Made by a program: the position numbers and the translations under genes
The notes under the pieces: generated by a model
What the model was told of the DNA's origin: nothing
Database searches by the model: none
Seen by the model: only the letters and a program-made list of their open reading frames with translations
From: Cycas panzhihuaensis
Taxonomy: Eukaryota > Plantae > Cycadophyta
Assembly (NCBI GenBank): GCA_023213395.1
Contig: CM041465.1
Span: 189,727,741 to 189,791,740 of the forward strand
Direction: 5' to 3'
Length of the DNA: 64,000 nucleotides
Shown: positions 14,699-62,036 of the stretch, piece after piece
How positions within the stretch are numbered: the stretch's first letter is position 1
Layout: each line of letters opens with the position of its first letter

Positions 14699-14733
<35 letters not shown>

Positions 14734-14765
14734 TATCTATCTATCTATCTATCTATATATATAGA
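14699..14765. repeat. (GA)n plus (TATC)n microsatellite
   Basis: Read directly. Confidence 0.95.
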
Positions 14766-26082: not shown

Positions 26083-26795
26083 GACAAAGAGGGTGATAAA
26101 AGTCTCAAGAAAAAAGAATAAGAGAACAAAAGGTATATAGTGGATAATGATTCCTCATTATTACAATCACTCAAAAGGCCAAACACAAGAGGATAGGAGA
26201 GTTCTATGTCTAGGTTTCTAGGCTTGTAGAGGGCTCACCCTATGGAAGGGGAAGAGCAATCGCCAAAATAGGCTTAATGTCAGGGTTCTGAGGATGGTAC
26301 AGGGTCAATCGAGGGGATCAACCAAGGGATCAAATCCTCTTGGGAGTAAATAGGTTGGAATAGAGGCAAAAAATAAAATCAACTCTTCAAAGTAAGTCCA
26401 TGGGGTATAAACATAGATATCATTTCAAGTAGGTGAAAAAAGGGAGATAAAAGGCCTCTTGTGGTGGTCAAAGGGGGTACTATAAATACTTGAAATGGGG
26501 AGAAAAAATAACATATAGGAGCTAAAATAGATTGGGACCCTAAAGGAAACATGGACGAGCTCACGATAATGGTCCAGAAGACTCCATCAAAATGGAAAAA
26601 GGCTATGGAGCCTCGAGTAGCCCTGTGAATGAAAGGGGGGTGGATACGAAAAACCAATTAATTTTTGTAATTACCTATACGATTTTCAAAGAAGGAGTTT
26701 GTTATGCCAGTTCTCTCCCTGAATACAAGCTCATTAGAGGAGATCTAGTTGTTAGATTATCATATAGATAGAACTATCTGGATCATGACTAAGTG

Positions 26796-38257: not shown

Positions 38258-39514
38258 TGGAAGTTCACCTTTAGGGGGTCACTATAGGTGAGTTATCCTA
38301 GACAAATGCTTAAGGTAAACTAGAGGTCTATAGATCTCAAGAAGGAAAGATCACCCTCAAAAGGCATCGATGCATTTGAACATAGATTCAGGGACCTGCA
38401 AATAGCACGTTATCCTCCTTTCCTTTTCAGAGTATCTCTTTTGGTTCAGGTTGAAAACAAAGCCTCTTTAGGTAACTAAATAGTTGAGTAAAGCACTCTT
38501 GTCCTTAGAGGGAGAGAAGAGGAGCTATACTTCCTTTTAGAAAAAGAAGTAAGTAGGAAAGAAGAAAGAGTGGTAGCAAAATCGAGAGGTAGTTTTGACC
38601 AGGCTTCTCAGGGTCTAGAAGTGTATTTAGAAGGGGATGAGGTTTTGGATGCTAAAACCTCAAAAATAAGATAATATTGCTAGCATCCAATGGCAACAAA
38701 GATGCAAGCTCTTATTTAGTGAAAAAGGAGAGCGAGGAAGGTGTAGGGTTGCAACCCAAGGATGGTTGGAAGGAAGTTATGAATATACCTTAGTAATTAG
38801 GTTGTGAAGTCTTCTCAGGTTATCAAGAAGAATATAACGATCTTTGAGTTTGAAAACTCTTATGGTTTTGGGGTGTGTTTTATTGCAATTGAGCATCCAA
38901 AATGATGTTTGACTTTATACAAGGTAAGTGTTGTCAAAAGAGCAAAATATGCAATAAACTAACACCATCAAACAAGTATATGAAATAAAGGTGTAACCTT
39001 TTTTTACTTATTTCCCTTACCTTCTTGTGCCTTTGAGTGGATGCAATGAAAACTAAAGGTTATAGAGGACGAAAAGAAAAGGTGGGATGCAAGGTGTTAC
39101 CTTGCATGGGTATGCCTCCTCTTTAATGAGAGGAGGATGAAGAATCCAATTGGCATTCCTAAAGGTACATGGAAGATGATATACACTTTCGTCTCCCTTC
39201 CCTTTATGTCATGCAACAAAAGGAAAAACAACTTCTAAAAAATAACCTTTAAACTTTCCTATTTCTTTTCTTCTTTTCTTTTTGAATTAAAACAAATAAG
39301 ATGATGGGGGTGAAGAGAGAAATATGTGTAAGAAAGTATGAACCTAATCATAGAGTTGATGCCACATTTCATTGTGCACCTTTATTGACACTCTTCATGA
39401 TGTGTCCCTACAAGTCATCGACGCTTTTGGTGCTATTGCCTATCGTGCAAGTCGTTGGAGTTAGAGGGAGGGGATTTTTTACCTTCCCCTAATCTCCAAA
39501 TGAGGCTTACTTAC

Positions 39515-42081
39515 TGTTTCCCAACTACTAGGAATGGACTCGAGATGCATCGACGCAGGTATGTTTAGGTATACATTCTTACTTTTTCCTGCCCATGGTT
39601 GATTAAGATTATTTAGCATAGATTGCTTAGCATACACCTGCTTGCATGCATTGCTTCTCTGCCTGATCATATTGCATGTGCTTACGATATATCATCAGCC
39701 TATGACAACTCACAACAGGGGCATTCCTTAGTGAATGCTACACCCCGTATGGTGCACAACCACCCACTTTGTCTCCACAGCCTCCCGGGATGTTTCAGTC
39801 AGTCCTGTTTGCTCCCGTTATAATATGTTGCTTGTGTTGCAGTCCCTCCTAAGCCTGATTTAATCCTTAGTTGGGACTCATTTCATTATTTTATCTACTT
39901 GCCCATTACCTGGGTATTCCTCCAGCTGCTCCAGCTTATTTTTTAGTCTTAATTTTTACTTCAAAACCTTATATTTCTGCCTTTGTTTCTCTTTTTTTGT
40001 TTCCAATCTGATACCACTATAAACTTAGCGATACCGTGGTCTTTACTGCGATACCACGAAGTTTACTGCGGTATAACTATTTGAAATTAAAAAAAGAAAA
40101 CTACGCAAAAATTTTCATTTTTTTTGTGGAACTACTGCGTGGCATCGATCGATTCACATCGCCCTGACACCCCCAATGTTCACCTGTAGTGAACAAGGGG
40201 ATAAAGGGGATTTTGCTCCCCATTCTTAGGATCTTTTTGCCATTTTTTTGTCTTTTCAACTAGAAACTCACAGAGAAAGACATAATCTACATGCATAAGA
40301 ACCTATTATAGAAGAGAAGGACTGCTACAAGCTAGATTTGCAGGGACCATTGCTTCCCCCCTCGACTCCTTCACGCCCCCCTACAGCCTCAACGGGGTCT
40401 CATACCTCTTTGCAAGTGATTAAGGTTTTAAAGGAAACTTCTACCAAAAAGCTCCTCTAAAGGGCCAACTACCAAGGCTCCAAGTTTACAAGGATATTTC
40501 CACATTTCACCCTTGCAAAAACCTGCTAGTATCAGCCCTCATACATTAGTTATTCATGATGTTTCCTAACAGCAAGCTCATGTTTGATTATCCTCTAACA
40601 AGATATTCTTTATTTCCACTTGTAATTTGTTTTGTTCTTATTTCTTTTATGTGTTGATGAATAAAATTCTAGTTTGTCTAGTTTTTATGTCATTGTACTA
40701 GATTGGTGCTATTCCCCATTTTCTTTTGAGGCCTCACTATTTTCTTTAAACCATCCCTCTCAACCCTTTCTTGGTTGGCTATTGCAAAGGGGCAACATAA
40801 AGAGGATTTGAGGAAGGTAGGTGGGGTTCCGTCCCCCTTTGCTGCCCTTCTCCCCAAGGGTTCCGTCCCTTGTCCTCTTTCCTTTTGTTATTAGCACTTT
40901 CTTAGGAAGTGGGTTAAGGGAGTTTAGGAAATCTAATTGTGGTGTTAAAACCAACGCTGGCAACTTGTTGCCACGCCGATTCCAGAAGTTTCATTTGTCT
41001 GTGTTGGGCCCTACCCAGGTCCCAAATCTTTCTGTTACTCCCTTCTTTGTTACTGCCTGTTGCCCTACGACCTTGTTGTCAACCTGTTTCTCCTTCCTGA
41101 GCCCTGTGGAGGTCCTTCGTGGGTGAGTTAGCCATTTTGAGGCTATACTCTTTTATCTTTTAGGTGTCTTTATGGTGTATGGTGGTGGGAGTCTTTATTG
41201 CATATTGCCATTTTACTTTGTTACATATTGATGCTTAGTGTAGATTTAAGTTCCATTTGATTTTAGTACGTATCTTTGGTATATTTTGTGGCTCCTCTTC
41301 CAAGAGAAAGGTATTCTTCTAACTTGTTTGCAGGATCTAGCGTTAGTGGAGCAGTACGTGGAAGGAACCCATTATAGGTTAGTTCTACGTATAGTGCATC
41401 CTTTATTGTTTCACGCTTTCGCTTCTTTTCCGTTTTTTTGCTTTTGCATGTTTAAAGGGAGGTAAGTTAGTCCCTCTTACATTGCTTCTGAATTATCGCC
41501 AACCCAAGATCGCATGCACAACAAACAAAGTAGGAAGGAATGGGACTCAAAGGGACAAGCAGCACTCCACTTGGGCGCTGAATCTAGGTATTTTTCTTGT
41601 TCCTTACATATCCCTTTTACATTATTGTCTTTTATACATTTGCTTGTATAGTTAGGAATATGTAAAAGATTAAAAAGGGAAAAAGAAGGTGTACTTATTT
41701 TTACATTGTTTCTTACATTAACTAGTGTAGCATAATGTAGTTAGATTGTTTACATTATATTTGAGTTACCCTCGTTGTACCCCCCTTTTCGCTTTTGCCT
41801 ATATGTTAGTTTATTGCCCTTCCGTTTTGTTGCCTTCTCATTACCTTGAGAAGACGCAACACGCCAGGCGCTTTCTCCTCTTCCCGGCCATCCGAGGGAT
41901 AGGAAGGCCTTACTTTGCATGGTTACCTGGAAGTAACCAGGTACCTTGCAGTTTTGAATCCATGCTCTAGCGCACGGATGCCCTGTGAGGTGAAGTCCTT
42001 ACTGCCTAGTTTAATCAGTATTGCATATTTTTATACCCTTTTTGCTAGACGTAGGGACGCCACTTCGTAGCAAGCGTTTCA
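39515..42081 (+). repeat. 5' LTR of element D (2567 bp)
   Basis: Direct repeat of 53560-56109. Differences are mostly transitions (4 in the first 60 bp) plus a ~20 bp indel near 40360. Confidence 0.96.
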
Positions 42082-42082
42082 C

Positions 42083-42100
42083 TGGCGACCATACTGGGGA
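42083..42100 (+). promoter_or_regulatory. Primer binding site, tRNA-Arg-like (TGGCGACCATACTGGGGA)
   Basis: Starts TGG one nucleotide after the LTR end and resembles Tat/Ogre Arg PBSs. Isoacceptor not determined. Confidence 0.8.
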
Positions 42101-42344
42101 CTACTAGTAAGGGAACTAGTTTCGCTTCCCCTTTTTGTTGGTGTTCTTACCTCTAGGTAGTCTCTTATTCTGTATTTCAGTTGGGCAGCCCCTAATGTGC
42201 TTGCTTCATTTCCCTCTTTTTGTTTCCTTCTAACAATGCTCGCGAACGCGTTGCATGCAACGTTTCTCACGCTTAAACTGCAGTCTGCCGTTGTTAGAAG
42301 ACCAATCACCTCGTTTCCTTCCGGCGTCAAACCCCGATTCAATA

Positions 42345-46099: not shown

Positions 46100-47160
46100 C
46101 GCTATGTGCATGGGGGCAACTCAGGACATAATCCTTGCCCCGGACAAGATCATCAAGGTAGGAGCAGAATGTACTCTTAACAAAGTGAGGGAATATTTCC
46201 TCCTGTTCTGGGAATTTCGTGATGTATTCATATGGGACTACTCAGACATGAAGGGGATTGACCCCTCTATCATCACGCATAACCTTACGACCGTTCCTGA
46301 CACTTGCCATGTGCATCAGAAGTAGCGTCCCCTTCACCTAAAACTTTCAGCTACTATTAAGATGGAGGTTGAGAAGCTTCTGGATGCGGGACTCATTTCT
46401 TCCATCGATTACCCTAAGTGGTTATCGAATATTGTTCCCGTTGCCAAAAAGAATGAGACCATTCGTATTTGTATCGACTTCCGTGACATAAACAACGCCT
46501 GTCCTAAGGACAACTTTCCTCTTCCCTTCATTGATCAAATAATTGATCGTACAGCTGGATTCAAAGTTATGTCCTTAATGAACGGCTTCTCTGGCTATAA
46601 CCAAATTCAGATTTCTCTTAAAGACTACCATAAGACGGCCTTCACTACGCCATGGGGTACTTTTGCCTACAAGGCAATGCCCTTTGGTCTCAAGAATGTA
46701 GGGGCTACTTATCAAAGAGCCATGCACTTCATCTTTCACGACCTCATCAACAATACGTTGGAGGTCTTCATGGATGATATGATGGGCCTTTCGCATACTA
46801 GAGCCCATCATCCCTCCAACTTGCGGGCCATCTTCATACGATGCCACAAGTATCACATTTGTCTAAACCCGATGAAATGTGTGTTTGCCATTACTTCAGG
46901 CAAACTCTTGGGTTTTCTTGTGTCACAACAAGGAATCCAAATCGATCCAGAAAAAGTCAAGGCAATCCTTGACATGCCGCTACCTAAGACCCAATGACAA
47001 ATTAAGTCGTTTCTGGGTAGGCTTGGTTTTCTGAGGCGTTTCTTGGCAAATTTTGCCATAAACACCAAGCCTCTTATGAACCTATTGAAGAAAGGAGCCC
47101 CTTTTCTCTAGTTAGATAAGACCCAAAAGGCCTTTGTAGGACTCAAGGAAGCCTTCGTTT
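46100..47160 (+). pseudogene. pol: Reverse transcriptase
   Basis: WLSNIVPVAKK, RICIDFRDIN, GFSGYNQI, MPFGLKNVGATYQRAM, EVFMDD. Same frame as PR; in-frame stops are of C>T/G>A type. Confidence 0.96.
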
Positions 47161-47570
47161 CCACTCCTATGTTGGCGCCTGCTCGCTTTCATAGGCCCTT
47201 CATTCTGTACACCTCGGCAATCGATGAATCCCTCGGCGCAATGCTTGCACAGGAGGACGATTTGGGAACCGAGAGGACTATTTATTTCATCAGCCACACT
47301 CTCGTTACCATTGAATTAAACTATCCTCCCACTGAGAAGGAATGCCTCTCCTTGGTCCATGCGACCAAGAAGTTTAGGCATTACTTGCTCGGTAATACAA
47401 CCAAGGTGATCGTTCAATCCGATCCCTTGTGTTACTTGCTTACTTATTCAAACTTGATGGGCAGGGTAGGTCGTTGGGCCATCCTGCTTCAAGAGTTCAA
47501 CTTGCAGGTCATTAATAGGAAGTCGAAGAAGGGAATGATAGTACCAGAACAATTAGCTGATGTTGCCATT
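47161..47570 (+). pseudogene. pol: Gypsy-type RNase H
   Basis: FILYTSA...LGAMLAQ...YPPTEKECLSLV...KFRHYL...RWAILLQEF. Confidence 0.93.
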
Positions 47571-47659
47571 CCCAATGCTAGTGGTATTCCTATTGACAAC
47601 TCTTTCCTGGATGAGTCTATTCTGACCATCCAAAACGCTTCTCCTCACCCACTCGCTGA

Positions 47660-48911
47660 TAGCGAGTGGTATGGTGACATTGTGTGGTATCTGACTCAGC
47701 AAGAATATCACCCTGAAGCTAGTAACAAGGTTAGGTCATGCATCCGTGCCACCACTAGGTAACACCTCCTCGTGGACAAAGTGTTGTACAAGAGATCCTT
47801 CGATGGGATCCTGCTTCGCTGTGTCACTCCTGATGAAGCAGACTAAATACTCTATGAATGCCACCATGGCATTTGTGGAGGCCACTTTGGAGGCCGATCC
47901 ATGGCCTAAATGATCCTTTGCATGGGTTATTACTGGCTGTCCTTGTTCAAGGATGCCCACGCCTATGCCCTTAGATGTCGGCGATGCCAAGAGAATGTAA
48001 ATATCTCTCATGTGCCCTCCGAGGCTTTACACCCTATCATGTCTTCGTGGCCCTTTTCTCAATGGGGCTTAGACCTCACTTGGGTTATATTGCCGCCATC
48101 TTCAGCACAACATAAATATATCTTAACCGCTACCGAATACTTCACTAAATGGACAGAGGCAATCCCCCTGTCCACTACACCTGGCAAGACAATAGCCACC
48201 TTCGTCTACCAGCATATTATTTGTCATTTTGGGATTCCAGATGTCCTAATTATGGATAATGGAACTTCCTTCTGTAATAAGGAAATGGATGAGCTATGCG
48301 AGAAATTTAAAATCTCGTATAAGACGTCATCCCCTTATTACCCCCAAGCAAACGGGCAAGTTGAATCTTTTAACAAAATGCTCATCAATATTCTGAAGAA
48401 GACCATTGCCCAATCTTAAAGGGATTGGCACATCCAAGTCCCTTCTGCCCTGTGGGCTTATTGCACTTCCATCTGCATGGCTACCAGAATGACTCCATTC
48501 TCGTTAGTCTACGGAACTGAGGCAGTACTCCCACTGGAAGTGGAGATCCCCTCTCTACGAGTTTCCCTTTGAGGCCTCATTGATGAGGAGTCTATTCGTC
48601 AGGCTCGCCTCCTGGACCTCGAAGCCCTAGACGAGAGGTGCTTAATGGCTTACCAAGTGAATCTTGCTTTGAAAGCCCACTTACAAAGGACATACGACAA
48701 ATGTCTTCGTGCCTGTCCTTTGTGCCCTGGGGACCATGTCCTCAAGTTGGAATACCTTTACGACTGCTTGGCCAAATTTGGGCCCAAATGGGTAGGCCCC
48801 TTCGTCATTCTTGAAAGCCTCGATAATGGTGCATATAGGATCGCTACCCTCGAAGGCTTAGAATTTGAGAAAGTGGTCAACGGGAAGTTCCTTAAGAAGT
48901 TTTATGTATGA
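47660..48911 (+). pseudogene. pol: Integrase (HHCC, DDE core, GPF tail)
   Basis: CHHGICGGH...CRRCQ, WGLD, IMDNGTSF, PQANGQVESFNK, KFGPKWVGPF. Stop at 48911. Confidence 0.96.
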
Positions 48912-49575: not shown

Positions 49576-52081
49576 CTACTGTTGTCCTGCTCCCGGGGTG
49601 CCATCCCCTCGTCTGTGTGATCCCTCTCTTGGGGACCACATCCCTTTGAGGCTCCTCCTGGGTCTCCGTAAGCTACCTGCCTTGCTCCCCTTGTCCTGAG
49701 GTCGTCTCAGGGTCGTAGCCGATGTGTGGGTATAAGTCCAGCTCCTGCTCGACCTCAAGGCCATCTGGGCTAGCAACTGATCGTATCGAGCCTGGATATG
49801 ATCCCTCTCTCCTCGAAGCCCCTCCTCTGTCACCTTGAGGTGCTCCTCTAGTACCGTTATGCGGACCCTGCTCTCTGCATCTCCACCTGCTCCACTTTGA
49901 GCCTCTAAGGCCTGGACTTGTCTATGCAGCTCATCCCGCTCGCCCCTGGCCGTGTTAAGCTCTCGCTGAAGCTACCCCCTGAATGTCATGTGTTCCTAGG
50001 ACTCTGCAGCCTAGATGTCTCTCACCCTCGCCAGTGGGGTGAACGCCTACATATGGGCTCCTGCCAACCTGGGCGCATCCTTCGCCTAGATGGGCAGTTG
50101 CCCCTCTGCGTAAACCTGAGGAAACATCTCCCTCACCATGGCCTCCACTAGTTTCTGGACCTCTGCTACACGTGCCAATGTAACATGCCATGTGTCAGTG
50201 TATATCCCCACTGCATACCATAATAAAATAAAACCAAGTATCTATCTAGATGTTAAATGACTAAAGAAACGGTTAGGTCTCATCTACCATGGCTGTCGGC
50301 TCCCCTGCTCATGCGACATCCTCATCTCCTGGCTCTCTACCAGCCGTAGGTACCTCGTCCTCAGGTACCTCCTTTGCCTCAGCCTCGCTCCTAACAGGGA
50401 CTGGATTAACTCTTGCCTCTCCAGATCTCCTCACGATCCATAGTCTGCAGGCCCTGGTCACTGGCCCCCTGCTCTTCTCAGCAGCTCCTGATGGGCATGC
50501 CCCTCCTCCGGCAGTCCCGAATGGTCCTGTTGCTCCTCCTGCTGACCATGATGGACCTGCCCTTCCTGCAGGTCGTGATGGAACTGCCTCTCTTGTAGGT
50601 CGTGATGGGCTAGCCCCATCTCCCCCATCATCACTGTCATCGCCACTATCACCATCGCTATCATCGCTGCTATCGCCATCGCTGTCATCGTCGTCGTCAT
50701 CGATGGGCGCCCTTACTCCGCCTGCCTCATGGTCACTCTCCCACCTCACTGCCCTATATGGCTCTACTGTATAGTCTATCAAAGTGAGGAGGTCGAGTGA
50801 CATCACATCTACTGACTGGCGAATATGCGCATGGTTCTCTATCCCTCAGATCCGCGTCTGCCATCTGTGAACCATCGAGGCCCACTCTACTATGGGGTAT
50901 GGCCCCCCTGCTAATGCCACTGCCGTAAAATGGTCAAAAAACTAGCACTGCAACAACATGCTATAAGATAATCCTCTCTTGCCAAAACTCTGGACGGTGT
51001 CTAGCTATGTGATGAGGTTCACCACGACCAGGGTAGCCCAATCCATCCTCTCATGAGCCTCGACCTGCACCTTGCTGCATCCACCCAGCCTCCAAGGATC
51101 TCCCTGTAGTTATGTTTCCAGAAAATCTAGAACATAATGCATAGTACAATCAACTTCCTCACCCGAGGAACCCTAGACATAAGTATAATCTGGAGGGCAA
51201 CTCCCCTCTGCTCCCACCTGTTGGTCCCTGTGAAAAACTAGGTCATCTCTTTATGTGCTGCCTCAGTGCTAGGCAGCAATCCCAGTCTCACTAGTCTCCC
51301 AGTCGCCAGAACTCCCAGAATCTGCCTAATATCCCCTGGGGTAATCGTGACATCATCTATCTGAGGCAAGTGAAATACGTGCCTCCTCCTGTCCTAGTGT
51401 GACACAATGTCAACCAGAAGCCTCTTGTCTGACGTGAACTGAGGTATCTTGAGGGCCTTGTATAGGCCACACCTCTTCAGAGTCGCTCTGTCCTCTCGGG
51501 ACGCCATCTCCATGTAGCTTAATATAGGCATACCTACATTCTTGTGGTTGTCCACCGCGGTAATTGCCTTCAATCATCAAAAATCAGTCAAGGTCAGCCT
51601 CATAGTAGTCATCTATGCTCCTGGCTTTCTTTTTTATTTTCCTACCTGATTTTGGGGGCTGTTTAGCTCCTCTTTTATTTTTTCTGGTTTTCTGCCTGCG
51701 TACCGTGCTAAATTTAGCGGTACCGCTAAATTTAGAGTGGGTCCCGTGGTGATCGAAATCCTATGGTGATTCCACTTCCAAGATCGCGGCACCGCGATCT
51801 TGGCCACAGTATGAATGGCAACCCCCTTAAAAACGAGGGTTTCTGCCTAGAAAATCATAAAATTTTTGTGGTGGACCCCAGGTGAAATCTTGGGACCAGG
51901 GCTCCCTAGTGCCCAGGTCCCCGCCTCTTTTTGGGTCCAATTCAGACTCTGAGAGGCACCCAATTACCCATAAGAGGCATAAAAAATGCATTAAATTCAC
52001 TAAAAAGCAATAAACTTTGAACTTTGAAATGGGATGGGTTTTGTGAGATCCACTCGCTGGGTCTGGCTTAACCATCGCCAT
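49576..52081 (-). pseudogene. Antisense three-exon Plant Mobile Domain (PF10536-like) plus acidic plus coiled-coil gene
   Basis: Exon 1 52081-52058 reads MAMVKPDP. Exon 2 51567-~50288 reads AITAVDNHKNVG...LLVDIVSH*DRRRHVFHLPQIDDVTITPGDIRQILGV (PMD signature W..ETHTFHLP.GE.TITL.DV..ILG). Exon 3 50210-49576 reads LQRELNTARGERDELHRQVQALEAQ. Carries premature stops and at least one frameshift. Confidence 0.85.
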
Positions 52082-52240
52082 CTCGTCTCTTTGGTCGTAA
52101 TGGCTCTCGCTATGCTCAGATCCAATGGTCAGATCGTCTCCTGCGTACCTCTGAAGTCGGGTAACACTCAGCGTCGTAAGGAATTGGCTCTGGTTTTGCA
52201 TGAGAGCTGGTGAAAATGAATCTGATTTTCATTCATTTTC

Positions 52241-52250
52241 CTTATATAGG
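52241..52250 (-). promoter_or_regulatory. Candidate TATA box (CCTATATAAG) of the antisense PMD gene
   Basis: About 160 bp upstream of the exon 1 ATG, with GGGCCC/TGGGC motifs adjacent. Confidence 0.55.
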
Positions 52251-52776
52251 TGGGGGCCCCAATGGGCACTTATTCCATTTCTAACCTCGCGATAGCCGTT
52301 GGGACCGTCTCGTTTTCCTGGTCGCCTTTGCCTTCTGGCCCTACCGCCCATTATACTCTATGGACACCCTTTTTGCCTTCTCTTGCAAAGGCATTTATGG
52401 CACCCCATTATTGCACTTTTCTCTAGTACCCTTCTGCATCATTTTGTGCGCTACTCCTGTGAATGCATGAGTTTATACTCATCTAGCTCATTTTTCCACT
52501 CTAGACCTATTTCCACAGCTCTTTTTTTCCCCTGGGGTCCCCAAAGGAAATGCTCCTTTGTCTGGGGGCATGTTTTGCTTCCCAAAGCAACCTTTGGTGC
52601 TCCAGGGCATCTTTTCTCTGTCTTCTCTCAGTCGATGACTAGATTGCTCGCTCTTATTTTTGGGTAACCTCATTGTTAGGTCCTCCTACCCTTCTCAGCC
52701 ACCTTTTTGCTCACCATTCGAGTCTTCCTTTTACTTTTATTACTATTTGTTTGCTACTAGAGCTTAGCGTCCCGAC

Positions 52777-53199
52777 ATGTCCCTTTTCATTTTTACCAAT
52801 GGTAGAAGTCGTGGCAATCCTGGACCTTCCGCCGCTGCATGGATTCTTCGTAGCCCCTCCAGACATGACTACCTGTGTTCCAGAGTCTTCCTTCTCGAGG
52901 CAACCAATAACGAATCTGAGTATATGGCCATTATTGAGGCCCTTACCGATGCTCTATGTTTCCATCACGAGTCCATTGTGTTGCTTTGCGATTCTTAGGT
53001 TGTGGTGTCCCATCTCACCCAGGTCTACTAGGTGCGATGCCCTTACCTAAGAACCCTTGCATCTACTACCAGGTCTCTTCTGGCTCATTTCTCATCAATA
53101 TATATTTGGCATATCTCCAGGGACCTCAATGCTGAGGCCGATAGCCTCGTCTGCCTCATCCTTGAGCGTCACCTCCTTCTTCTTGACGACCACCTCTAA
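52777..53199 (+). pseudogene. Stand-alone archaeal-type RNase HI (aRH), 140 codons
   Basis: MSLFIFTNGRSRGNPGPSAAAW...EATNNESEYMAIIEAL...CDS*VVV...HISRDLNAEADSL. One frame with two internal TAG stops and a D>N change at the first catalytic residue. Confidence 0.92.
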
Positions 53200-53549: not shown

Positions 53550-53559
53550 AAGGGGGTAG
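53550..53559 (+). promoter_or_regulatory. Polypurine tract (AAGGGGGTAG)
   Basis: Immediately 5' of the 3' LTR; equivalent at 16837-16846 and 58106-58115. Confidence 0.9.
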
Positions 53560-56109
53560 TGTTTCCCAGCTACTAGGAATGGACTCGAGATGCATTAACG
53601 TAGGTATGTTTAGGTATACATTCTTACTTTTTCCTGCCCATGCTTGATTAAGATTATTTAGCATAGATTGCTTAACATACGCCTGCCTACATGCATTGCT
53701 TCTCTACCTGATCATATTGCATGTGCTTACGGCACATCATCAGTCTATGACAACTCACAACGGGGGCATTCCTCAGCGAATGCTACACCCCGTATGGCGC
53801 ACAGCCACCTGCTTTGTCTCCACAGCCTCCTGGGATGTTTCAATCAGTCCTATTTGCTCCCGTTACAACATGTTGCCTACGTTGCAGTCCCTCCTAAGCC
53901 TAATTTAATCCTTAGTTGGGACTCATTTCATTATTTTCGCTACTTGCCCATTACCTAGGCATTTTTCCAATTGCTCCAGCTTCTTTTTTAGTCTTAATTT
54001 TTACTTCAAAACCTTATGTTTCTGCCTTCTTTTCTCTTTTTTTATTTCCAGTCTGATACCATTGTAAACTTAGCGGTACCGCAGTCTTTACTGCGGTACC
54101 ACGAAGTTCACCACGATACGACTGTTTGAAATTTAAAAAAGAGAACCACGTGATAGTTTCTATTTTTTTTGTGGAACTGTCATGTGGCGTCGATCGATTC
54201 GCATCGCCCTGACACCCCCAATGTTCACCTGTAGTGAACAAAGGGATAAAGGGGATTTTGCTCCCCATTCTCAAGATATTTTTACCATTTTTCTAACTTT
54301 TCAACTAAAAACTCACAGAGAAAGACATAATCTACATGCACAGGAACCTGTTATAAAAGAGAAGGACTGCTACAAGCTAGATTTGCAGGGACCATTGCTG
54401 CCCCCTACAGCTCTCAACAACGGGTCTCATACCTCTTTGCAAGTGATTAAGGTTTTAAAGGAAACTTCTACCAAAAAGCTCCTCCAAAGGGCCAACTACC
54501 AAGGCTCTAAGTTTGCAAGGATATTTCCACATTTCACCCTTACAAAAACCTGTTATTATCAGCCCTCATACACTAGTTATTCCTGCTATTTCTTAACAGC
54601 AAGCTCATATTTGATTCTCCTCTAACAAGGTATTCTTTATTCCCACTTCCAATTTATTTTGTTCTTATTTCTTTTGTGTGTTGATGAATAAAATTCTAGT
54701 TTGTCTAGTTTTTATGTCATTGTACTAGATTGGTGCTATTCCCCATTTTCTTTTGAGGCCTCACTACTTTCTTTAAACCATCCCTCTCAACCCTTTCTTG
54801 GTTGGTTGTTACAAAGGGGCAACATAAAGAGGATTTAAGGGAGGTAGGCGGAGTTCCGTCCCCCTTTGCTGCCCTTCTCCCTAAGGGTTCCATCCGTTGT
54901 CCTCTTTCCCTTTGTCATTAGCGCTTTCTTAGGAAGTGGGTTAAGGGAGTTTAGGGAATCTAGTTGTGGTGTTAAAACCAGTGCTGGTAACTTGTTGCCA
55001 TGCCGATTCCAGAAGTTCCATTTGTCTGTGTTGGGCCCTACCCAAGTCCCAAATCTTTCTGTTACTCCCTTCTTTATTACTGCCTATTTCCCTACAACCT
55101 TATTGTCAACCTGTTTCTCCTTCCCGAGTCCCGTGGAGGTCCTTCGTGGGTGAGTTAGCCATTCCGAGGCTATACTCTTTTCCCTTTTGGTTGTCTTTAT
55201 AGTGTATGGTGGTGGGAGTCTTTATTGTATGTCGCCATTTTACTTTGTTACATATTGATGCTTAGTGTCGATTTAAGTTCCATTTGATTTTAGTATGTAT
55301 CTTTGGTATATTTTATGGCTCCTCTTCTGAGAGGAAGGTATTCTCCTAACTTGTTTACAGGATCTCGCGTTAGTGGAGTAGTACACGGAACGAACCCATT
55401 GCAGGTTAGTTCTACATATAGTGCATCCTTTATTGTTTCACACTTTCACTTCTTTTCCATTTTTTTGCTTTTGCATGTTTAAGGGGAGGTAAGTTAGCCC
55501 CTCTTCCATTTCTTATGGAAACTATCGTCAATCGGCATCACATGCATAATGAACGGAGTAGGAAGGAATAGGACTCAAAGGGATGAGCAACACTCCACTC
55601 GGGCACCGGATCTAGGTATTCTTCTTGTTCCTTGTATATCCCTTTTACATTGTTGTCTTTTATACATCTGCTTGTATAGTTAGGAATGTGTAAAAGATTA
55701 AAAAGGGGAAAAGAATGTGTACCTATTTTTACATTATTTCTTATATTAGTTAGTGTAGCATAACATAGTTAGATTGTTTACATTATATTTAAGTTACCCT
55801 CATTGTACCCCCCTTTTCACTTTCGCCTATACGTTAGTTTGCTTCCCTTCTATTTCGTTGCCTTCTCATTACCTTGAGAAGATGCAATGCGCCAGGCACT
55901 TTCTCCTCTTCCCGGCCATCTGAGGGGTAGGAAGGCCTTGCTTTACATGGCTACCTGGAAGCAACCAGGCACCTTGCAGTTCTGAATCCATGCTTTGGCA
56001 CACGGATGCCCTGCGAGGTGAAGTCCTTACTGCTTAGTTTAATCAGCATTACATATTTTTATACCCTTTTTGCTAGACGTAGGGATGCCACTCCGTAGCA
56101 AGCATTTCA
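53560..56109 (+). repeat. 3' LTR of element D (2550 bp)
   Basis: Direct repeat of 39515-42081, followed by the TSD. Confidence 0.96.
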
Positions 56110-58744
56110 CTTACCATCCCCAAACAAGAAAAGCAATGTAAGGACAAGAACAAAAATAAAGCAAAAACAACACTAGAAACAAATAGAATGTTATCCTTTT
56201 GTGATTTGTTGCTCAATTTACAAAATGGCCTCTAACCTATAATATAAAATAAAGAAAATCCTCCAACAAGTATGATATATATGTATGTCTATATTCTTGA
56301 CAAATAATGTTAGTATGTCATGATATGAGTAAAAGGAGGAGAACCATAGTCCTATGAGTTTCTTGTCTAATGATCCTTTTTATATGTGAGTATATAACAA
56401 TCAGAACATGTGTTAAAGGGAAGAGGGTGGATATCACTTTGAAATGGATAACTCCTCTAAATGTTGCTAGGTCCCCACAAGCTATGAGTAGCTCACGTTG
56501 CTAATGTTTTTAAGCAAGTGCAAGATTGGTATGTATGTATGTAGGCCTCACAACAAAACCAAGGTCCTAAAACTAGCAGCAAAATATAAGGAAATGCACC
56601 TCAAAGCCCATGAGAGGGGATTACTCTAGTGAGAGATGGATTTAGGAGTTAGAACTCCAACCTATGGACTTCTCCACAGGCTCCTTTAACTTATTTTGGC
56701 ATCTTTATCCCTATAAGCTAGCAGATTTAGAGTGTGTGGGATGAGGAGAATGGTGTGAAGGAGGTATTGCCTCCTTGCACGAGGCAAATGTGGCCCAAAA
56801 TCAATACACAACTACTCTAGGCATAGATCTAGTATCTTAAGGCTAAAAATAGCAATGCATAAACCATAGAAGATGGAATTCTTGCAAAGAAAAATTGGAA
56901 AAAACTAGATTTATCTTACCTAAGTGGTAGCTCTAGGTAGGGAACAATATTGGAAGAGAGGAAGACTCTATTTTTCCAAGGAAAGTGGGAGATCCTTTTT
57001 CCTTTATTTACTTAGATGGGCCTCCTTACTTAGCTTGGCCTACTTTTCACTTTCCTCTTCTTGCTTGTGGAAGAAAACCTGTAGCTTTCTGTATATAGGA
57101 GAAGATGGAGGAGACTTGGAGAAGGGAAGAGAAGAGAAATTCATGTTTTTCCAAAAGAGAGAGTCAAGAATGATAAGATGAATCATGAATTGATTCCCCA
57201 AATGAATTTAAAATTGAATTATGTTCATTTGGGGTAGGCATCAGGGCTATTAGGGGTGGACCTAGGTGAGTCTTGAGGTGAGGTAGTGTGTCGTCTAACC
57301 GCAAAAGCTAAAACTAGCCATCTTTTACCATAATAAACCAAGTGATAGTCACACTATGAACTTATTCGCAACACCACTAATACATTAGTGGTACCACTAA
57401 CATATTATTGATGCATAACAATTAGAGAAGGGAAAATAGAAATGGATATGGGGTGGTAACAAAAACATAAAATCAACAATCAAAATTAATAGAATAGTGA
57501 AAAAAGGGGAAGGGGCCCTAACTGAGGCTTGGGACTCCTCCCTGGGGGGCTACACACCAACCTAAGCTCATCCTACATTACAACAATTCATAAAAACATG
57601 TATCAAAGTCACCTATTGGGGTTAGAACCTCACGATAATGGTAACAATCGAGGTGTTAGAGTGTGAAGGAAGGCCAGGGGTGGGCCTTGATGAGGTATAT
57701 GGGGGAATGTCGTAGTGAGCAAGTAATGGGGAGACACCTACATATTAAAACTCTTAATAAACCATCCTAGATAGATTAAAGGATAAGTGAGGTAAAGATA
57801 AGAAGGGGGAGATGCAATAAAGTAAGTTGAAGTGCACATAAGCTAGGCTACGAAGATCCATGAGTACTTGCAACTAGGAGAGAGATCACCTAGGAGTTAT
57901 GGTGCTATTAGACCAGAGTCCTAGTTGTTATAGGTGAAGTATCATACACAGGAAAGCTAATCATCTAAACCAAACAAGCACTCAAGTAATCATACAAACA
58001 TTACATATCACAAGCTATAAAATGTAATCAAATATAAGGGGCAAAATATATACCTAATTATACCTGTATAGTAATAATCCAATCTATTTTCGATAGTTGA
58101 GAAACACTACCCCCTTAGCAGTAGAACCTTGTCGCTCTGAAGCATCAAATGATGTCGAATGTTGTCATCACAATCTCAATAATATATAAAGCTCCTATGT
58201 CGGTAACCAAGGTGAGTGTCAAGTGTCGTGATGGGTAATGTGGGAGGAAGACATATGTTTAGGTGAGGAAGAGGAGGCATGGCTCAATCAATCCTCAAGG
58301 TCAGATCCCTGGACCCAAGACATATATGAGATGATGGAAAGGTGACCTAGGGGTTATCCATGGTAACACCTAGGTGGGTTGCATAACTCTAGAGAGTAGA
58401 ATAGGATCATAATCACTGCAGAAGCACCAAAGTAGTAACAGAACAGAAGGGGGAAGGAGATAAAGGGATGCCCCATCACCTTCGCACACAAGATAATCAA
58501 AGGGTAAATGTAATCTAAAAAACAAGATAAACAGCATCTAGGAGAGTGTAAATATGATCAATGAGTATGTGAAAGTCGTATCATAGGTGATATGAGAGTA
58601 AGTAAAGAGATAAACCTGTGGTCACCATAGTTTAACCTCATTATTGGCCCATTTCAGAGAGATGAGATTAGTCAAAACAAGGAAATAATGATAATCCAAA
58701 GATTAGTGCAAGGAGCCAACTTGTTAGGTTGCTTGAGAAGGATC

Positions 58745-59155
58745 ATCTAAGAGAGGTAAATGATGCTTGAGGATGAGGCAAACAAGGATATCCACCTTGA
58801 CATTTTGATCACGAGGGATATGTCAAATGTCTTCCAAAGGAAAAGTGGACAAAAGTAACCTAATAGTCAAAGTGAGGGATCTTAATCAAGGGCAAAGGAC
58901 TTGGTAGACTTGAGTCAACTATAATACCATGATTTACGAGTCACAAAAGAGAATGATGGGGCCATGATAGAAGTGAAGTGCATTAGTGAGAGCCTCTATA
59001 ATGGCAGTGTAATCCACTTTATTGTCCATGGCCTCAAGTAAGTACATCTCAGAATGCATGAGATCATGGCCGAAAGGATTACAGATGATCTAGGTAGCTG
59101 TAGAGGGTCCTGAGTTACCATGAATACCACCATCGGTGTAGATTAGAAGAGCCAT
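58745..59155 (-). pseudogene. Decayed stand-alone aRH (element C)
   Basis: MALLIYTDGGIHGNSGPS...ATDNKVDY...CDS*IMV. Confidence 0.85.
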
Positions 59156-59880
59156 GCTGCAGGAGAGGAGATAGAACTCTCAAAAAGAAGGGATATAGGA
59201 GTGTGTAGAATAAATGGAAGGCAAAGGATAAGACCTAATCACTTATGAAAACTTAAAAGGTGACCATAGGTAGATAAGAGAGCCCTATTAGTAGGCTACT
59301 AAGCTAATGGAGGACTCACCTAATGGAAGGAGAAGAGTCATTAGAGAATTAAGCCAAATGCATGATCACAAAGCTGGCGCGAGAATAAGAAAGAGGCTAA
59401 GGCAAAGGTGGAACTCACGTTAGGAGCTTTGAGGAGTCAAAACAATTGCAAAAATGGAATTGGTATGCTAAAACGAGCTTATGGAGTATAAACACTCGTA
59501 GCATTTTAGGCAGCCAGAAAAGGGGAAGAAAAAGGGGGCTCTCATTAGAGTAAAAGGGCATCATAAATGTACAAAATGGCTAGGAAATGTCATATTTAGG
59601 AGTATAACTAAGCTTAGGCCCTAAAGGGAATAGAGATGAGCTAGAGGAGGCAGTCCTGGTGGCTCTCTTGTAGTGGAGAAAGGGTGTGGTGCCTCAAGAG
59701 GTACTGCAAAAATGGAAGGAGGATGAGGGGCAAAAAAGAATTCATTTTCATACCACCTCATATGATCTGAGAGCTCTACACCCTCAACACCTAATTATAC
59801 TACCCCATCATAAGCTTAGTTAAGGAGATCTAATTGTCAGATCATTGTATAGGGAGAGATGTTGAGTCCAGGAGTGAGAG

Positions 59881-62036
59881 ATGGCACCTACTAGGGTAGA
59901 TCTAGTAAGTTGATCTAGACCATAGCCCTTTCAATTTTACCTTTTGTCATTAATATTTTATTTAATATTTTTATGCCTTTAGAAGGCAAATTAGATCTTT
60001 CGAGGCCCGTTTGGGGACCTAGAAAGGGCTGGACCAGGGCTCCCTAGAGCCCTGGACCTAGTGGACTAATTATAGTCCATTAGAATTTCTTTTTTTTTCC
60101 TTTTAATTTTTAGTAGTGGAGGCCGTGGGACCATAAATTTCTTTATGGTACCACAAATTTATTTGCAATACCATGGACTTCCTTGCAAGATGGAGGAGGG
60201 ACCTAAAGCCCACTAAGATATTTGCAATATCATGAATATATTAGTAGTGCCAGGGTTGATAGGTAGAAGAAAGTAAATAATGGGATTAATATTAATTTCT
60301 AAGTGGTTTTCTCTCATTTTGAGTGATCTAAGAGGGGTTCTAAATGGCAAAGAGGAGACTGGCTAATAAGTGATATCTTTTGTTATTTTTGTAGCTCATT
60401 ATCGCGATTGATAATTGTAAAAATATGGGAAGGGTGATAATAGGATTTATAAACTTGTTAGAGAGGTGGAAGTAGACCACCCCATGATGGTGTAGGCTCT
60501 AAAAGATCATCCACACACCCTAGTATGCCTTGGATCAGGCTCTTTTGGTAGACATAGTTTCACATTCAGATCACAATCACCATATATTATATCTCCCTCA
60601 GGTAGGAGATGTCACCATTACTCCTACTAATATGAGGAGGATATTGGATGTACTAGATAGGGGTGCACTAGCAGCATTGGGGACCCTTCCTAGTACAGAT
60701 TCTACCCATTGAGAGGCAACTAGATTTTTCACTGATTGGGCTTATTGGGACAGGAGGGGGATACCCTTAAGGACAATCATCATGTCCAAGATTCCTCACA
60801 TAAGGAAGATGATCATCTTTGTCATTCTATTCTAGATCTCCCAAAAATAGAACTATAGGGATACCCCTAGAGGATGGATGGTGATGGTCTAGAGATGTCA
60901 GCAGGGAGAGACATTTGATTGGGCCGCTTTGATAGTGGCCAATCTCACTACCTAGCTTGATTATATCAAGAGAATCAAATTGTCATTTTGCTCCCTCCTG
61001 TAGTGCTAGTTTTTTTACCACTTCCATAGAGTAGATCAGGTAGTAGGTCCCCAACCTATATTAGCTAGTGCCCTAATAGTGCACAGGTGGCAGAATTGAT
61101 TCAGGAGCGCAAGGAAGCCAACACATGTCAGAAAATCAATGGTGATGACCTCTCTAGATCTCCTTACCATGGGATACTACATTAGTGACCTATACTATAC
61201 TGTCCATTGGGGGAGTGATGACGAGGGAGGAGAGGTAGCTAACCCTCTTGGGGAGGAGCTAGGAGGCAAGCAGGGGGGTGAGGGAGCTACTGGTAATGAC
61301 CTAGAGGTAGTGGAAATGATAGTCATAGAAGCAGAGGTAACTTTAGCTATGGGTAGAGAAGAGGTCCTTGGAGCAAAGGAGGGAGAGGAAGGTGATGCAC
61401 CAGGTGCTCCAAGAGAGGAGGAGGAGTTAGGCAAAGAGGAGATAGAGGTTGTATCTATAGGTGTGGTAGCTAAGAAGGTGCCAGACATCCCAGGAGGTAA
61501 AACTTCCCCTTCTCTTCTAGATTTACATTTTGATTTAAATATTCTATACTTACATAGTTCACTTGATTTATTTCAGTTTTGATTTATAGTCAAATATGCT
61601 CCTATTGATACCCTAGTATGTATGGATGGCAGGTAGAGATGACATGGGAGAGCTGATTAGGTGGGTGGTCACCAAACTCTTCTTACAAATCTACAAAGAG
61701 GGATAACCTCCTATCATAACAAGAGAGGAGCCTAGGGTGGTAGGGAGGCACACAATAACTTTCACTCCACTCGTGAGGGTGCAAGACACATGGGTTGTAG
61801 AAGCCTAAGAGCTATAAGGCAAGGGAGATTAGTTATGCATTGAGAGACACTAGTTGTGGGTATAGTGCAGGCCTTAGAGGCTCAAGGAGGAGGAGATAGA
61901 GATGTAGTAGATGATGTGAGGGTTGTGGTAGTAGAGGAGAGGCTCTGAGGGATGGAGAAGGAGAGGGACAAACTCTAGGAGAGGTATGATTGACTGGTCA
62001 ACTAGATAGTTGCTTGGTCCTTACACAGCAGGACTC
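59881..62036 (+). pseudogene. Decayed PMD/coiled-coil gene (element C), truncated by element E
   Basis: Exon 1 59881-59904 MAPTRVDL then GTAAGT. Acceptor tttgtag, exon 2 from 60395. ORF 60530 reads ALLVDIVSHSDHNHHILYLPQVGDVTITP. Acidic ORF 61139; donor at 61497. Confidence 0.85.

What the first reader, a model, noticed from the sequence alone, without database searches (positions are those of the whole stretch)
49576..53199. Candidate accessory system: head-to-head PMD gene and stand-alone RNase H1 with cognate palindromic arrays in Tat retrotransposons
Seen: five diverged copies place an antisense spliced PMD-acidic-coiled-coil gene and a sense aRH ORF back to back between pol and the 3' LTR. 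ATG-to-ATG spacing is ~695 bp in D, ~713 in B, ~725 in C and ~1550 in the right arm. The same palindromic motif is arrayed in the LTRs and in PMD intron 1. Known: PMD ORFs occur in Ty3/Gypsy elements; host PMD proteins MAIN/MAIL1 act in gene expression and transposon silencing; TatIII elements carry aRH 3' of integrase; VANDAL transposons encode VANC anti-silencing proteins that bind arrayed motifs in their own non-coding DNA. Inference: this is a separately transcribed bidirectional module in which PMD may target the arrays to counter silencing and free RNase H1 may clear RNA:DNA hybrids. I do not know of a description of this combined architecture but cannot search to confirm novelty.
Basis: partly seen in the sequence, partly recalled or inferred. 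Interest (0 to 1): 0.9.

Follow-up and report, generated by a model that had tools for sequence, protein, structure and literature searches.

The report
Tat retrotransposon PMD and RNase H cassette
Old, broken copies of a known gymnosperm-type "Tat" jumping gene carry, behind the integrase, a backwards-facing spliced PMD gene and a separate small RNase H gene; the layout is real and was once under selection but is already in the literature, and the only fresh lead is a palindromic DNA motif shared by the element's long terminal repeats (LTRs) and the PMD gene's first intron.

Summary
Window 49576-53199 is the 3' accessory region of a dead 16.6-kb Ty3/Gypsy element (39514-56111). It holds an antisense three-exon gene (PMD, acidic stretch, long helices) and a sense 140-codon type-1 RNase H ORF that starts at its own Met. 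The two ATGs are 696 bp apart. Four more copies exist at 64-74% nucleotide identity. All five keep the 8-codon first exon; four keep the aRH.

Both ORFs show excess third-codon-position change between families, so both were once under purifying selection. GYGGTACCRC palindromes occur 8 times against 1.6 expected, always in Tat LTRs or PMD intron 1.

The novelty claim fails. Tat lineage III / TatIII was described with an antisense PMD ORF in 2015. The post-integrase aRH in a separate ORF was described in 2023. The scan flagged the same cassette at least 8 times elsewhere in this genome, and one follow-up reached the same verdict.

I could not test a bidirectional promoter, PMD binding to the palindromes, or R-loop clearing. 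No usable RNA evidence was found. The motif sharing is the one undescribed detail. It fits a 2025 preprint on PMD protein-DNA motif modules, but only as a hypothesis.

The parts
39514..42083 (+). 5' LTR of element D (TG..CA ends; 5-bp target site duplication CTTAC). A decayed palindrome array lies at about 40012-40075.
   Evidence: LTR pair alignment: 2.57 kb, 90.2% identity, 216 of 250 differences are transitions. Motif hits at 40028 and 40048.
42085..42103 (+). Putative primer binding site, TGGCGACCATACTGGGGAC, one base after the 5' LTR.
   Evidence: Read directly from the sequence. The tRNA identity was not tested.
46362..48911 (+). Pol: RT (46362-46997), native RNase H (47169-47762), integrase (47910-48419 and C-terminal piece 48645-48911, followed by a stop).
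   Evidence: Pfam RVT_1 2e-22, RT_RNaseH 1e-28, rve 1e-14. ORF list.
49576..50210 (-). PMD gene exon 3: conserved ..LF.QVY.EGQPPIID..PLLRVR.. block, long helical (coiled-coil-like) region, basic tail and stop codon (49576-49578). It carries 5 in-frame stops in this copy.
   Evidence: Frame and cross-copy conservation. AF2 helices at residues 2-29 and 32-74 with pLDDT above 90.
50211..50325 (-). PMD gene intron 2 (115 nt, phase 1). The donor has decayed from GT to AT; the acceptor reads TATGCAG.
   Evidence: Same position and phase as copy C, which has GGAG|GTAAAA ... GGCAG|.
50326..51567 (-). PMD gene exon 2: PMD domain followed by an Asp/Ser/Glu-rich acidic stretch. It is broken by several stops and at least one frameshift.
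   Evidence: tblastn of P0001 and P0003 (70% and 61% identity). These hit PF10536 and PMD clusters in the ESM Atlas. Third-position excess between C and B is [55,39,93], p = 5e-6.
51568..52057 (-). PMD gene intron 1. It holds two perfect palindromes, 51708-51735 (CTAAATTTAGCGGTACCGCTAAATTTAG) and 51778-51803.
   Evidence: Conserved donor, acceptor and phase. Inverted repeats. Motif hits. All 6 CpGs are intact, P about 0.02 at the LTR decay rate.
52058..52081 (-). PMD gene exon 1: ATG plus 7 codons (MAMVKPDP), followed by the donor GCGAGT.
   Evidence: Conserved in all five copies: C MAPTRVDL|GTAAGT, B MVAVRLDL|GTACAT, E MAIVHLNL|ATGAGT, A (ATT)AIVHLDP|GTGAGT.
52082..52776 (.). Divergent intergenic region between the two ATGs. 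Conserved TATA-like boxes lie on the PMD side (GTATAAAC near 52478, CATAAATG near 52395). A pyrimidine-rich stretch lies upstream of the aRH ATG.
   Evidence: Three-copy alignment. Upstream sequences. No codon periodicity. Promoter function was not tested.
52777..53199 (+). Stand-alone aRH (type-1 RNase H) ORF of about 140 codons. In this copy it has one frameshift between 52995 and 53032, and the first catalytic Asp reads Asn.
   Evidence: Pfam RNase_H and RVT_3. PDB RNase HI hits. The Met lies 7 codons before the catalytic Asp in D, C, B and E. Third-position excess: D-C [25,16,47] p = 1e-4; D-B p = 3e-4; C-B p = 1e-3.
53559..56111 (+). 3' LTR of element D, preceded by the polypurine tract AAGGGGG. 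A palindrome array at 54057-54118 has three to four units about 20 bp apart (GCGGTACCGC, GCGGTACCAC).
58742..61945 (.). Copy C of the cassette: aRH on the minus strand (ATG at 59155) and PMD gene on the plus strand (ATG at 59881). Intron-1 palindromes lie at 60125-60164 and an LTR palindrome at 57372-57413.
25687..29171 (.). Copy B of the cassette: aRH on the minus strand (ATG at 26082) and PMD gene on the plus strand (ATG at 26796). Its element keeps the gag region but lacks RT, RNase H and integrase.
11400..15520 (.). Copy E: PMD gene on the minus strand (ATG at 13587) and aRH on the plus strand (ATG at 15140), with 1553 bp between the ATGs.
6560..9122 (+). Copy A: PMD gene only (start codon now ATT, near 6968). 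It is 74% identical to E in inverted orientation, and no aRH is found in the window.
   Evidence: The A-E divergence shows no codon periodicity, [60,60,60].

Best explanation
This is the 3' accessory region of a dead TatIII-type LTR retrotransposon (Tat lineage III; the 'post-integrase aRH' or 'structure #3' kind).

Shown:
- After pol ends with the integrase, the element carries an antisense three-exon gene. It encodes a PMD domain, an acidic stretch, a long helical region and a basic tail.
- Head-to-head with that gene lies a sense ORF of about 140 codons for a cellular-type RNase H, which starts at its own Met.
- Both ORFs were kept by purifying selection while the families diverged.
- All copies in this window are decayed.

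Inferred:
- The aRH supplies RNase H activity for reverse transcription in trans. The native RNase H next to RT has Ser where the first catalytic Asp should be, as reported for Tat elements.
- The aRH mRNA comes either from a promoter in the 700-bp intergenic region or from a spliced subgenomic RNA started in the 5' LTR. I put these at about even odds.
- The antisense PMD gene needs a promoter of its own. Conserved TATA-like boxes 300-400 bp upstream of its ATG are the candidates.
- The GGTACC-centred palindromes in the LTR and in PMD intron 1 are most likely binding sites for a dimeric protein, which would tie the internal genes to the same control as the LTR promoter. A host factor is the more likely binder (about 60%). 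The element's own PMD protein is a minority possibility (about 15-20%).
For: Element anatomy: LTRs, target site duplication, primer binding site and polypurine tract. Pol domains in Ty3/Gypsy order.

aRH: Pfam hit above the cut-off. PDB hits to stand-alone RNase HI with the Met at the domain start. Conserved Met in four copies.

PMD: profile hits P0001 and P0003 with PF10536 E 3e-5 and 1e-4, ESM Atlas 28 of 30 nearest clusters, and tblastn at 61-70% identity to D.

Gene model: conserved ATG, donors, acceptors and phases.

Selection: third-codon-position excess in both ORFs and none in the intergenic region or intron.

Motif enrichment and location.

Literature: PMC4408406 (lineage III antisense PMD eORF; degenerate native RNH), PMC6317226 (TatIII: 5-bp target site duplication, 12.7-17.3 kb, aRH after INT, 3' reverse eORF), PMC10508981 (aRH in a separate ORF in conifers, Cycas and Ginkgo).
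Against: No window piece reaches Pfam's PMD threshold by itself; the assignment rests on sub-threshold hits of close relatives. There is no transcript evidence. The only possible RNA run is of uncertain nature, covers introns and intergenic DNA alike, and its joints do not match the conserved splice sites. The degenerate catalytic residue in the native RNase H is seen in one decayed copy only. Promoter elements are read by eye from a three-sequence alignment. The binder of the palindromes is unknown. Copy B's LTR shows no clear array.
Confidence: 0.72

Rival explanations
1. The two genes form a self-contained anti-silencing module driven by one bidirectional promoter. The PMD protein binds the GGTACC palindromes in the LTRs and in its own intron to counter silencing, in the manner of VANC. 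The free RNase H removes RNA:DNA hybrids.
For: The motif is shared by the LTR and PMD intron 1 in several diverged copies. All six CpGs in D's intron palindromes are intact, while LTR CpGs survived at about 52% per copy. Both genes were under selection. Host PMD-C proteins associate with specific, partly palindromic motifs and oppose Polycomb silencing, and their fold is said to resemble VANC's DUF1985 domain (bioRxiv 10.1101/2024.09.27.615353). A DUF1985 cluster appears at rank 30 in the ESM Atlas list (a lead only).
Against: Nothing here tests binding, transcription or chromatin. The motif is the same in families about 65% identical (CpG decay aside), so there is no co-variation between protein and site. 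Direct DNA binding by PMD has not been shown even for MAIL1 (same preprint). The native RNase H is degenerate, so a replicative role explains the aRH without invoking R-loops. The M1M and M2M sequences could not be read from the text for comparison.
Confidence: 0.13
2. The aRH is not an independent protein. It is joined to Pol by splicing out the roughly 3.9-kb stretch that holds the antisense gene, giving the 'C-terminal aRNH of Pol' drawn for lineage III in 2015.
For: Pyrimidine-rich tracts followed by AG lie 1-25 nt upstream of the aRH ATG in D, C and B. Ogre elements splice an intron to make Gag-Pol (cited in PMC4408406). PMC13468544 calls the pol-versus-separate-ORF question controversial.
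Against: The candidate acceptors sit at different phases relative to the ATG in D and C. The Met is conserved exactly at the domain start in four copies and aligns with the N-terminus of stand-alone RNase HI. Pol ends in a stop after a typical integrase C-terminus. TATA-like boxes lie 45-62 nt upstream of the ATG in B and C.
Confidence: 0.08
3. The antisense 'gene' and the palindromes have no function: a captured transposase fragment and chance or hitch-hiking repeats.
For: All copies are broken. The function of PMD in retrotransposons is unknown (PMC4408406).
Against: Exon structure, splice sites and phases are conserved across five copies at 64-74% identity. There is a strong third-position excess. 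Motif counts are far above the shuffles and confined to two compartments.
Confidence: 0.04

Closest known systems
Tat lineage III (Ustyantsev et al. 2015, PMC4408406) = TatIII in REXdb (Neumann et al. 2019, PMC6317226) = 'structure #3 / post-integrase', clusters Tat H/I (Biryukov & Ustyantsev 2023, PMC10508981; Prokopeva et al. 2026, PMC13468544)
   Same: Ty3/Gypsy order RT-RH-INT; an additional archaeal-type RNase H downstream of integrase, in a separate ORF; an antisense PMD-encoding extra ORF in the 3' part; 5-bp target site duplication; length about 15 kb; a gymnosperm-type genome full of old copies.
   Different: The texts I could read do not say that the PMD gene lies between integrase and the aRH, head-to-head with it. 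They do not describe its three-exon structure with an 8-codon first exon. The 2015 paper gives lineage III a PMD without a coiled coil, whereas here an acidic stretch and long helices follow the PMD. The GGTACC palindromes shared by LTR and intron 1 are not mentioned. The figures and supplements of those papers were not available to me.
Ogre / Tat lineages IV-V with PMD-coiled-coil extra ORFs
   Same: PMD followed by a coiled coil. Lineage V has it antisense at the 3' end. Ogre shows that splicing occurs in the Tat clade.
   Different: Those are angiosperm elements with the aRH inside Pol, between the native RNase H and integrase. Lineage IV has the eORF at the 5' end, in sense orientation.
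VANC anti-silencing proteins of VANDAL DNA transposons
   Same: In idea only: a TE-encoded non-transposase protein, and short motifs arrayed in the TE's own non-coding DNA.
   Different: VANC belongs to a DNA transposon and carries a DUF1985 domain, and its binding and demethylation have been shown experimentally. Here nothing of the kind is shown, and the domain is PMD.
[quoted passage not shown]
   Same: A PMD protein, and a short motif (palindromic for MAIL2's M2M) near transcription starts.
   Different: Those are host genes of the PMD-C clade in Arabidopsis. Retrotransposon PMDs are placed in clade A. The motif sequences could not be compared, and direct binding is unproven even there.

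Membership tests
TatIII / post-integrase-aRH Tat LTR retrotransposons | Ty3/Gypsy domain order RT - RNase H - integrase between LTRs | tested here: met
   Pfam RVT_1, RT_RNaseH and rve in that order. LTR pair with TG..CA ends and a 5-bp target site duplication.
TatIII / post-integrase-aRH Tat LTR retrotransposons | Additional cellular-type RNase H (aRH) downstream of integrase | tested here: met
   PF00075 at 32.6 bits against a cut-off of 25.8, at 52768-52995. PDB RNase HI hits. Same position in copies C, B and E.
TatIII / post-integrase-aRH Tat LTR retrotransposons | aRH in a separate ORF outside pol (structure #3) | tested here: met
   The pol stop is at 48912. An antisense gene lies in between. 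The Met is conserved at the domain start in 4 copies. How it is expressed was not tested.
TatIII / post-integrase-aRH Tat LTR retrotransposons | Antisense extra ORF with PMD in the 3' part | tested here: met
TatIII / post-integrase-aRH Tat LTR retrotransposons | 5-bp target site duplication and length 12.7-17.3 kb (REXdb table) | tested here: met
   Target site duplication CTTAC; the element spans 39514-56111, 16.6 kb (PMC6317226 supplement).
TatIII / post-integrase-aRH Tat LTR retrotransposons | RT groups with the Tat clade in a phylogeny | not tested
TatIII / post-integrase-aRH Tat LTR retrotransposons | Primer binding site complementary to tRNA-Arg (64% of TatIII) | not testable with these tools
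   The site reads TGGCGACCATACTGGGGAC. No plant tRNA set was at hand.
TatIII / post-integrase-aRH Tat LTR retrotransposons | Degenerate catalytic core of the native RNase H | tested here: inconclusive
   ORF 47169-47762 reads ..LYTSAIDES.. where Ty3/Gypsy RNase H has TDAS (the comparison is from memory of the motif). This is a single decayed copy.
PMD (Pfam PF10536) | Match to the family HMM above the gathering score | tested here: inconclusive
   Window pieces give no hit. Close relatives P0001 and P0003 score 23.8 and 22.1 bits against a cut-off of 34.9, colinear over profile positions 1-179. The ESM Atlas supports PMD. The exons were not joined for a search.
Type-1 RNase H (PF00075) | Catalytic Asp-Glu-Asp-Asp residues | tested here: met
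   Copies C, B and E have Asp at the first site, while D has Asn. The Glu in ..NNESEY.., the Asp in ..CDS and the Asp in ..NAEADSL.. are present in D. Residue roles are assigned from knowledge of E. coli RNase HI.
VANC-like sequence-specific anti-silencing system | TE protein binds arrayed motifs in its own TE and removes silencing marks | not testable with these tools
   Only the arrays are seen.
VANC-like sequence-specific anti-silencing system | DUF1985 domain | tested here: not met
   No Pfam DUF1985 hit. There is only a rank-30 ESM Atlas lead at 0.88.

The most novel reading that the evidence does not exclude
A retrotransposon-borne 'PMD protein-DNA motif module'. The element's own PMD-acidic-helical protein would recognise the GGTACC-centred palindromes placed both in the LTR and in the first intron of its own gene. 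That would keep the LTR promoter and the internal promoter(s) free of Polycomb or DNA-methylation silencing. It would be a retrotransposon counterpart of VANC, and the possible ancestor of the host MAIL/MAIN motif modules.
Probability: 0.13. Interest if true: 0.75.

Novelty: new member of a known kind. Interest (0 to 1): 0.33.

Why it matters
The element class is known, so the cassette itself changes nothing. Two open questions in the Tat literature are touched. The first is how an RNase H placed outside pol can serve the element, a question raised in PMC10508981. The second is what retrotransposon PMD proteins do, which PMC4408406 calls enigmatic.

This window adds three things. The stand-alone aRH and the PMD gene were both under purifying selection. 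They keep a fixed head-to-head arrangement, with conserved splice sites, across very old families. A GGTACC palindrome is shared by the LTRs and PMD intron 1. This last point gives a concrete candidate site for testing whether TE-encoded PMD proteins bind DNA of their own element, an idea now being pursued for host PMD proteins.

Tried and rejected
- Direct Pfam scans of 30 stop-free pieces of the antisense gene found no PMD.
- An ESM Atlas search with a 62-aa window piece gave no usable hit.
- MAFFT stacked non-overlapping fragments on top of each other, so a multi-segment profile could not be built. Only the 49-position segment profile was searched. Two of its 7 hits, P0004 and P0005, are unrelated repeat proteins.
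- The search for homologous proteins with P0003 returned only itself and one fragment.
- A PDB profile search for the PMD region found nothing.
- Sequencing runs: no holder is on record as RNA. The one possible RNA run, X24, covers every bin including introns. Its joints at 50130>50353 and 49691>50070 at first looked like splice sites. They do not match the donor and acceptor conserved between copies (50326|50325 and 50211|50210), so I do not count them as evidence.
- An apparent frame change shared by all five copies (..IIFxILF / FYSRYLGN..) was rejected. P0003 shows that the first frame simply continues, and the second is DNA conservation read in the wrong frame.
- I first took GAG|GTACCT for the exon-2 donor. 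Comparison with C and B moved it to GGAG|(G>A)TGAGG.
- The M1M and M2M motif sequences could not be read from the preprint text.
- The spliced protein was not assembled or searched as one sequence. The exons were searched apart, by reference.
Full report
**What the window is.** The 64-kb window is AT-rich plant-type DNA packed with old LTR retrotransposons. The finding lies inside element D.
- D's LTRs are 39514-42083 and 53559-56111. They are 2.57 kb long and 90.2% identical, and 216 of 250 differences are transitions.
- The ends are TG..CA and the 5-bp target site duplication is CTTAC.
- A primer-binding-site-like TGGCGACC... follows the 5' LTR by one base. A polypurine tract, AAGGGGG, precedes the 3' LTR.
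- Pfam finds RT (46362-46997), the Ty3/Gypsy RNase H (47169-47762) and integrase (47910-48419), in that order.
- The last pol ORF, 48645-48911, ends ..LKKFYV and then a stop.

**The aRH.** Window 52768-52995 (+) matches Pfam RNase_H above its cut-off (E 1e-7) and RVT_3. The C-terminal half follows in another frame at 53032-53196.
- The best solved relatives are stand-alone archaeal and bacterial RNase HI (4e19, 3u3g, E. coli). The ORF's Met aligns with the first residues of those chains.
- Homologous ORFs occur in copies C, B and E.
- In all four copies a Met sits exactly 7 codons before the first catalytic Asp: MSLFIFTN, MALLIYTD, MALLIYID, MASIIYID. No conserved coding sequence lies upstream.
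- In D the Asp reads Asn and there is one frameshift, so this copy is dead.

**The antisense gene.** Stop-free pieces on the minus strand between 51573 and 49579 are conserved in five places of the window. None hits PMD in Pfam on its own.
- A 49-position profile of the best segment (A1) was searched against 1.84 billion proteins. It found short Logan-derived fragments P0001, P0002, P0003, P0006 and P0007.
- P0001 aligns to D at 70% identity over all 121 residues. P0003 aligns at 61% to D and 50% to C over 141 residues.
- P0001 and P0003 match PF10536 (PMD) at E 3e-5 and 1e-4, colinearly over profile positions 1-67 and 38-179. Both are below the gathering score because they are fragments.
- In the ESM Atlas, 28 of the 30 nearest named clusters to P0003 are PMD, with a top score of 0.93.
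- I take the PMD assignment as sound, and it agrees with the literature on this lineage. P0003 also settled the reading frame where DNA conservation made all three frames look conserved.

**Gene model.** The exons were not joined for any search.
- The ATG (52081), 8 codons and a GT(A/G)AGT-type donor are conserved in all five copies: D MAMVKPDP|GCGAGT, C MAPTRVDL|GTAAGT, B MVAVRLDL|GTACAT, E MAIVHLNL|ATGAGT, A with ATT in place of ATG|GTGAGT.
- A pyrimidine tract plus AG precedes ..VDNHKN.. in phase 0 in D, C and B.
- Exon 2 (51567-50326) holds the PMD and an acidic stretch.
- Intron 2 (50325-50211) is in phase 1 in both D and C. The donors in D and B show GT>AT decay.
- Exon 3 (50210-49579) carries a conserved ..LF.QVY.EGQPPIID..PLLRVR.. 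block and a region that AlphaFold2 folds as two long helices (residues 2-29 and 32-74, pLDDT above 90). A disordered basic tail follows.

**Arrangement.** In every copy the order along the element is pol, antisense PMD gene, sense aRH, 3' LTR.
- Copy A is truncated before the aRH.
- Copy B's element keeps homologues of D's gag-side ORFs but has no RT, RNase H or integrase.

**Selection.** The copies are 64-74% identical in DNA. I counted mismatches by codon position. None of the alignable tail-region (exon 3) comparisons between copies was significant.

| Comparison | Mismatches at codon positions 1, 2, 3 | p |
|---|---|---|
| PMD core, C vs B | 55, 39, 93 | 5e-6 |
| aRH, D vs C | 25, 16, 47 | 1e-4 |
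| aRH, D vs B | 21, 9, 36 | 3e-4 |
| aRH, C vs B | 28, 28, 56 | 1e-3 |
| Intergenic region plus intron 1 | no periodicity | 0.9 |
| PMD core, A vs E | 60, 60, 60 | 1 |

So both proteins were kept by selection while the families diverged. A and E drifted apart after death.

**Palindromes.** GCGGTACCGC with up to 1 mismatch occurs 4 times against 0.08 expected: twice in D's intron 1 and twice in D's 3' LTR.
- Allowing CpG decay, GYGGTACCRC with up to 1 mismatch gives 8 hits against 1.58 expected; no shuffle reached 8.
- All 8 lie in PMD intron 1 (A 7205; D 51717 and 51786; C 60145) or in Tat LTRs (D 40048, 54073 and 54093; C 57388).
- D's intron holds a perfect 28-nt palindrome and a perfect 12+2+12 palindrome.
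- The LTR arrays have three to four units about 20 bp apart. C's intron array has period 20. B's intron has about five degenerate units, and B's LTR has none that I could recognise.
- The 13-mer TTAGCGGTACCGC is identical in D's LTR and intron.
- All six CpGs of D's intron palindromes are intact, while CpGs in the LTR pair survived at about 52% per copy (P about 0.02). This is a mild oddity.

**Expression.** No run holding the stretch is on record as RNA. The family is very abundant in DNA runs of three coded organisms. One small run guessed to be RNA covers introns and spacer alike, and its joints do not match the conserved splice sites. There is therefore no evidence either way.
- On the PMD side of the spacer, GTATAAAC and CATAAATG/TATAAATA are conserved 300-400 nt upstream of the ATG.
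- On the aRH side there are CTATATAC and CTATATCC boxes 45-62 nt upstream in B and C. Pyrimidine tracts ending in AG are also present.
- Those aRH-side signals fit an internal promoter or a 3' splice site equally well.

**Comparison with the literature.**
- Ustyantsev et al. 2015 (PMC4408406) describe gymnosperm Tat lineage III with an antisense PMD eORF at the 3' end and the aRNH beyond integrase. They give lineages IV and V a PMD plus coiled coil.
- REXdb lists TatIII with a 5-bp target site duplication, 12.7-17.3 kb, aRH and a 3' reverse eORF.
- Biryukov & Ustyantsev 2023 (PMC10508981) place this aRH in a separate ORF ('structure #3', found in conifers, Cycas and Ginkgo) and ask how it can work from there.
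- Prokopeva et al. 2026 call the pol-versus-separate-ORF question controversial.
- Pelissier et al. 2025 (bioRxiv 10.1101/2024.09.27.615353) show that host PMD-C proteins sit at specific motifs, one of them palindromic, and oppose Polycomb silencing. They note a VANC-like fold and propose that TE-encoded PMD proteins may be anti-silencing factors.
- None of the full-text searches run here turned up the GGTACC palindromes or the intron structure.

**Earlier notes of this scan.** Earlier notes list the same cassette at least eight times elsewhere in this genome. One follow-up reached the same verdict. Two first-reader notes report GGTACC palindromes shared by the PMD intron and LTRs in other windows; these are unchecked leads.

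**Verdict.** The object is a member of a described class, so the claimed novelty of the architecture does not hold. The functional model (bidirectional module, PMD binding its arrays, R-loop clearing) is untested. I rate it unlikely as a whole, with the PMD-motif part the only piece worth a bench test.

Noticed in passing
window 6560-9122 and 11419-13995, with 9627-11174 between: Copies A and E are 74% identical in inverted orientation and flank a long (TA)n/(TATA)n/(TG)n microsatellite block. Their divergence shows no codon periodicity, so they separated after the gene was dead. This could be a large inverted duplication or two head-to-head insertions.
   Followed up: partly
window 22050-36600 (element B): Element B keeps LTRs, gag-side ORFs, the PMD gene and the aRH. 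It has no RT, native RNase H or integrase: only about 1.1 kb lies between the last gag-side homology (30320) and the PMD gene's end (29171). It may be a non-autonomous derivative or a deletion in this copy.
   Followed up: partly
window 47169-47762: The native RNase H next to RT reads ..LYTSAIDES.. where Ty3/Gypsy elements have the catalytic TDAS. This fits the reported decay of the native RNase H core in Tat elements, but it is seen in a single decayed copy.
   Followed up: no
window 51708-51803: All six CpGs of the two intron-1 palindromes are intact, although LTR CpGs of the same element survived at only about 52% per copy (P about 0.02). Possible causes are local hypomethylation, arm-to-arm correction, or chance.
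   Followed up: partly
window 49400-53500 (reads laid): Tens of thousands of contigs from DNA runs of three coded organisms match this stretch at 80% or more, and few match at 99% or more. Where this copy differs, it mostly has T or A where the relatives have C or G. That fits a very abundant, old, methylation-decayed family.
   Followed up: no
window 52100-52130 (and the C and B equivalents): A conserved GATCT-N7-9-AGATC inverted repeat lies about 70 nt upstream of the PMD ATG in D, C and B. It could be a promoter-proximal or 5'-UTR element.
   Followed up: no
window 6033 and 2456-2510: Further GGTACC-centred sequences lie outside the annotated compartments: AATGGTACCATA at 6033, and a 26-bp tandem unit containing GGTACC at 2456-2510. 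They may belong to other Tat-related fragments.
   Followed up: no
window 19566-20717: Another gag-side fragment on the minus strand is homologous to D's ORFs 43637-44963. It belongs to a further, unmapped element.
   Followed up: no
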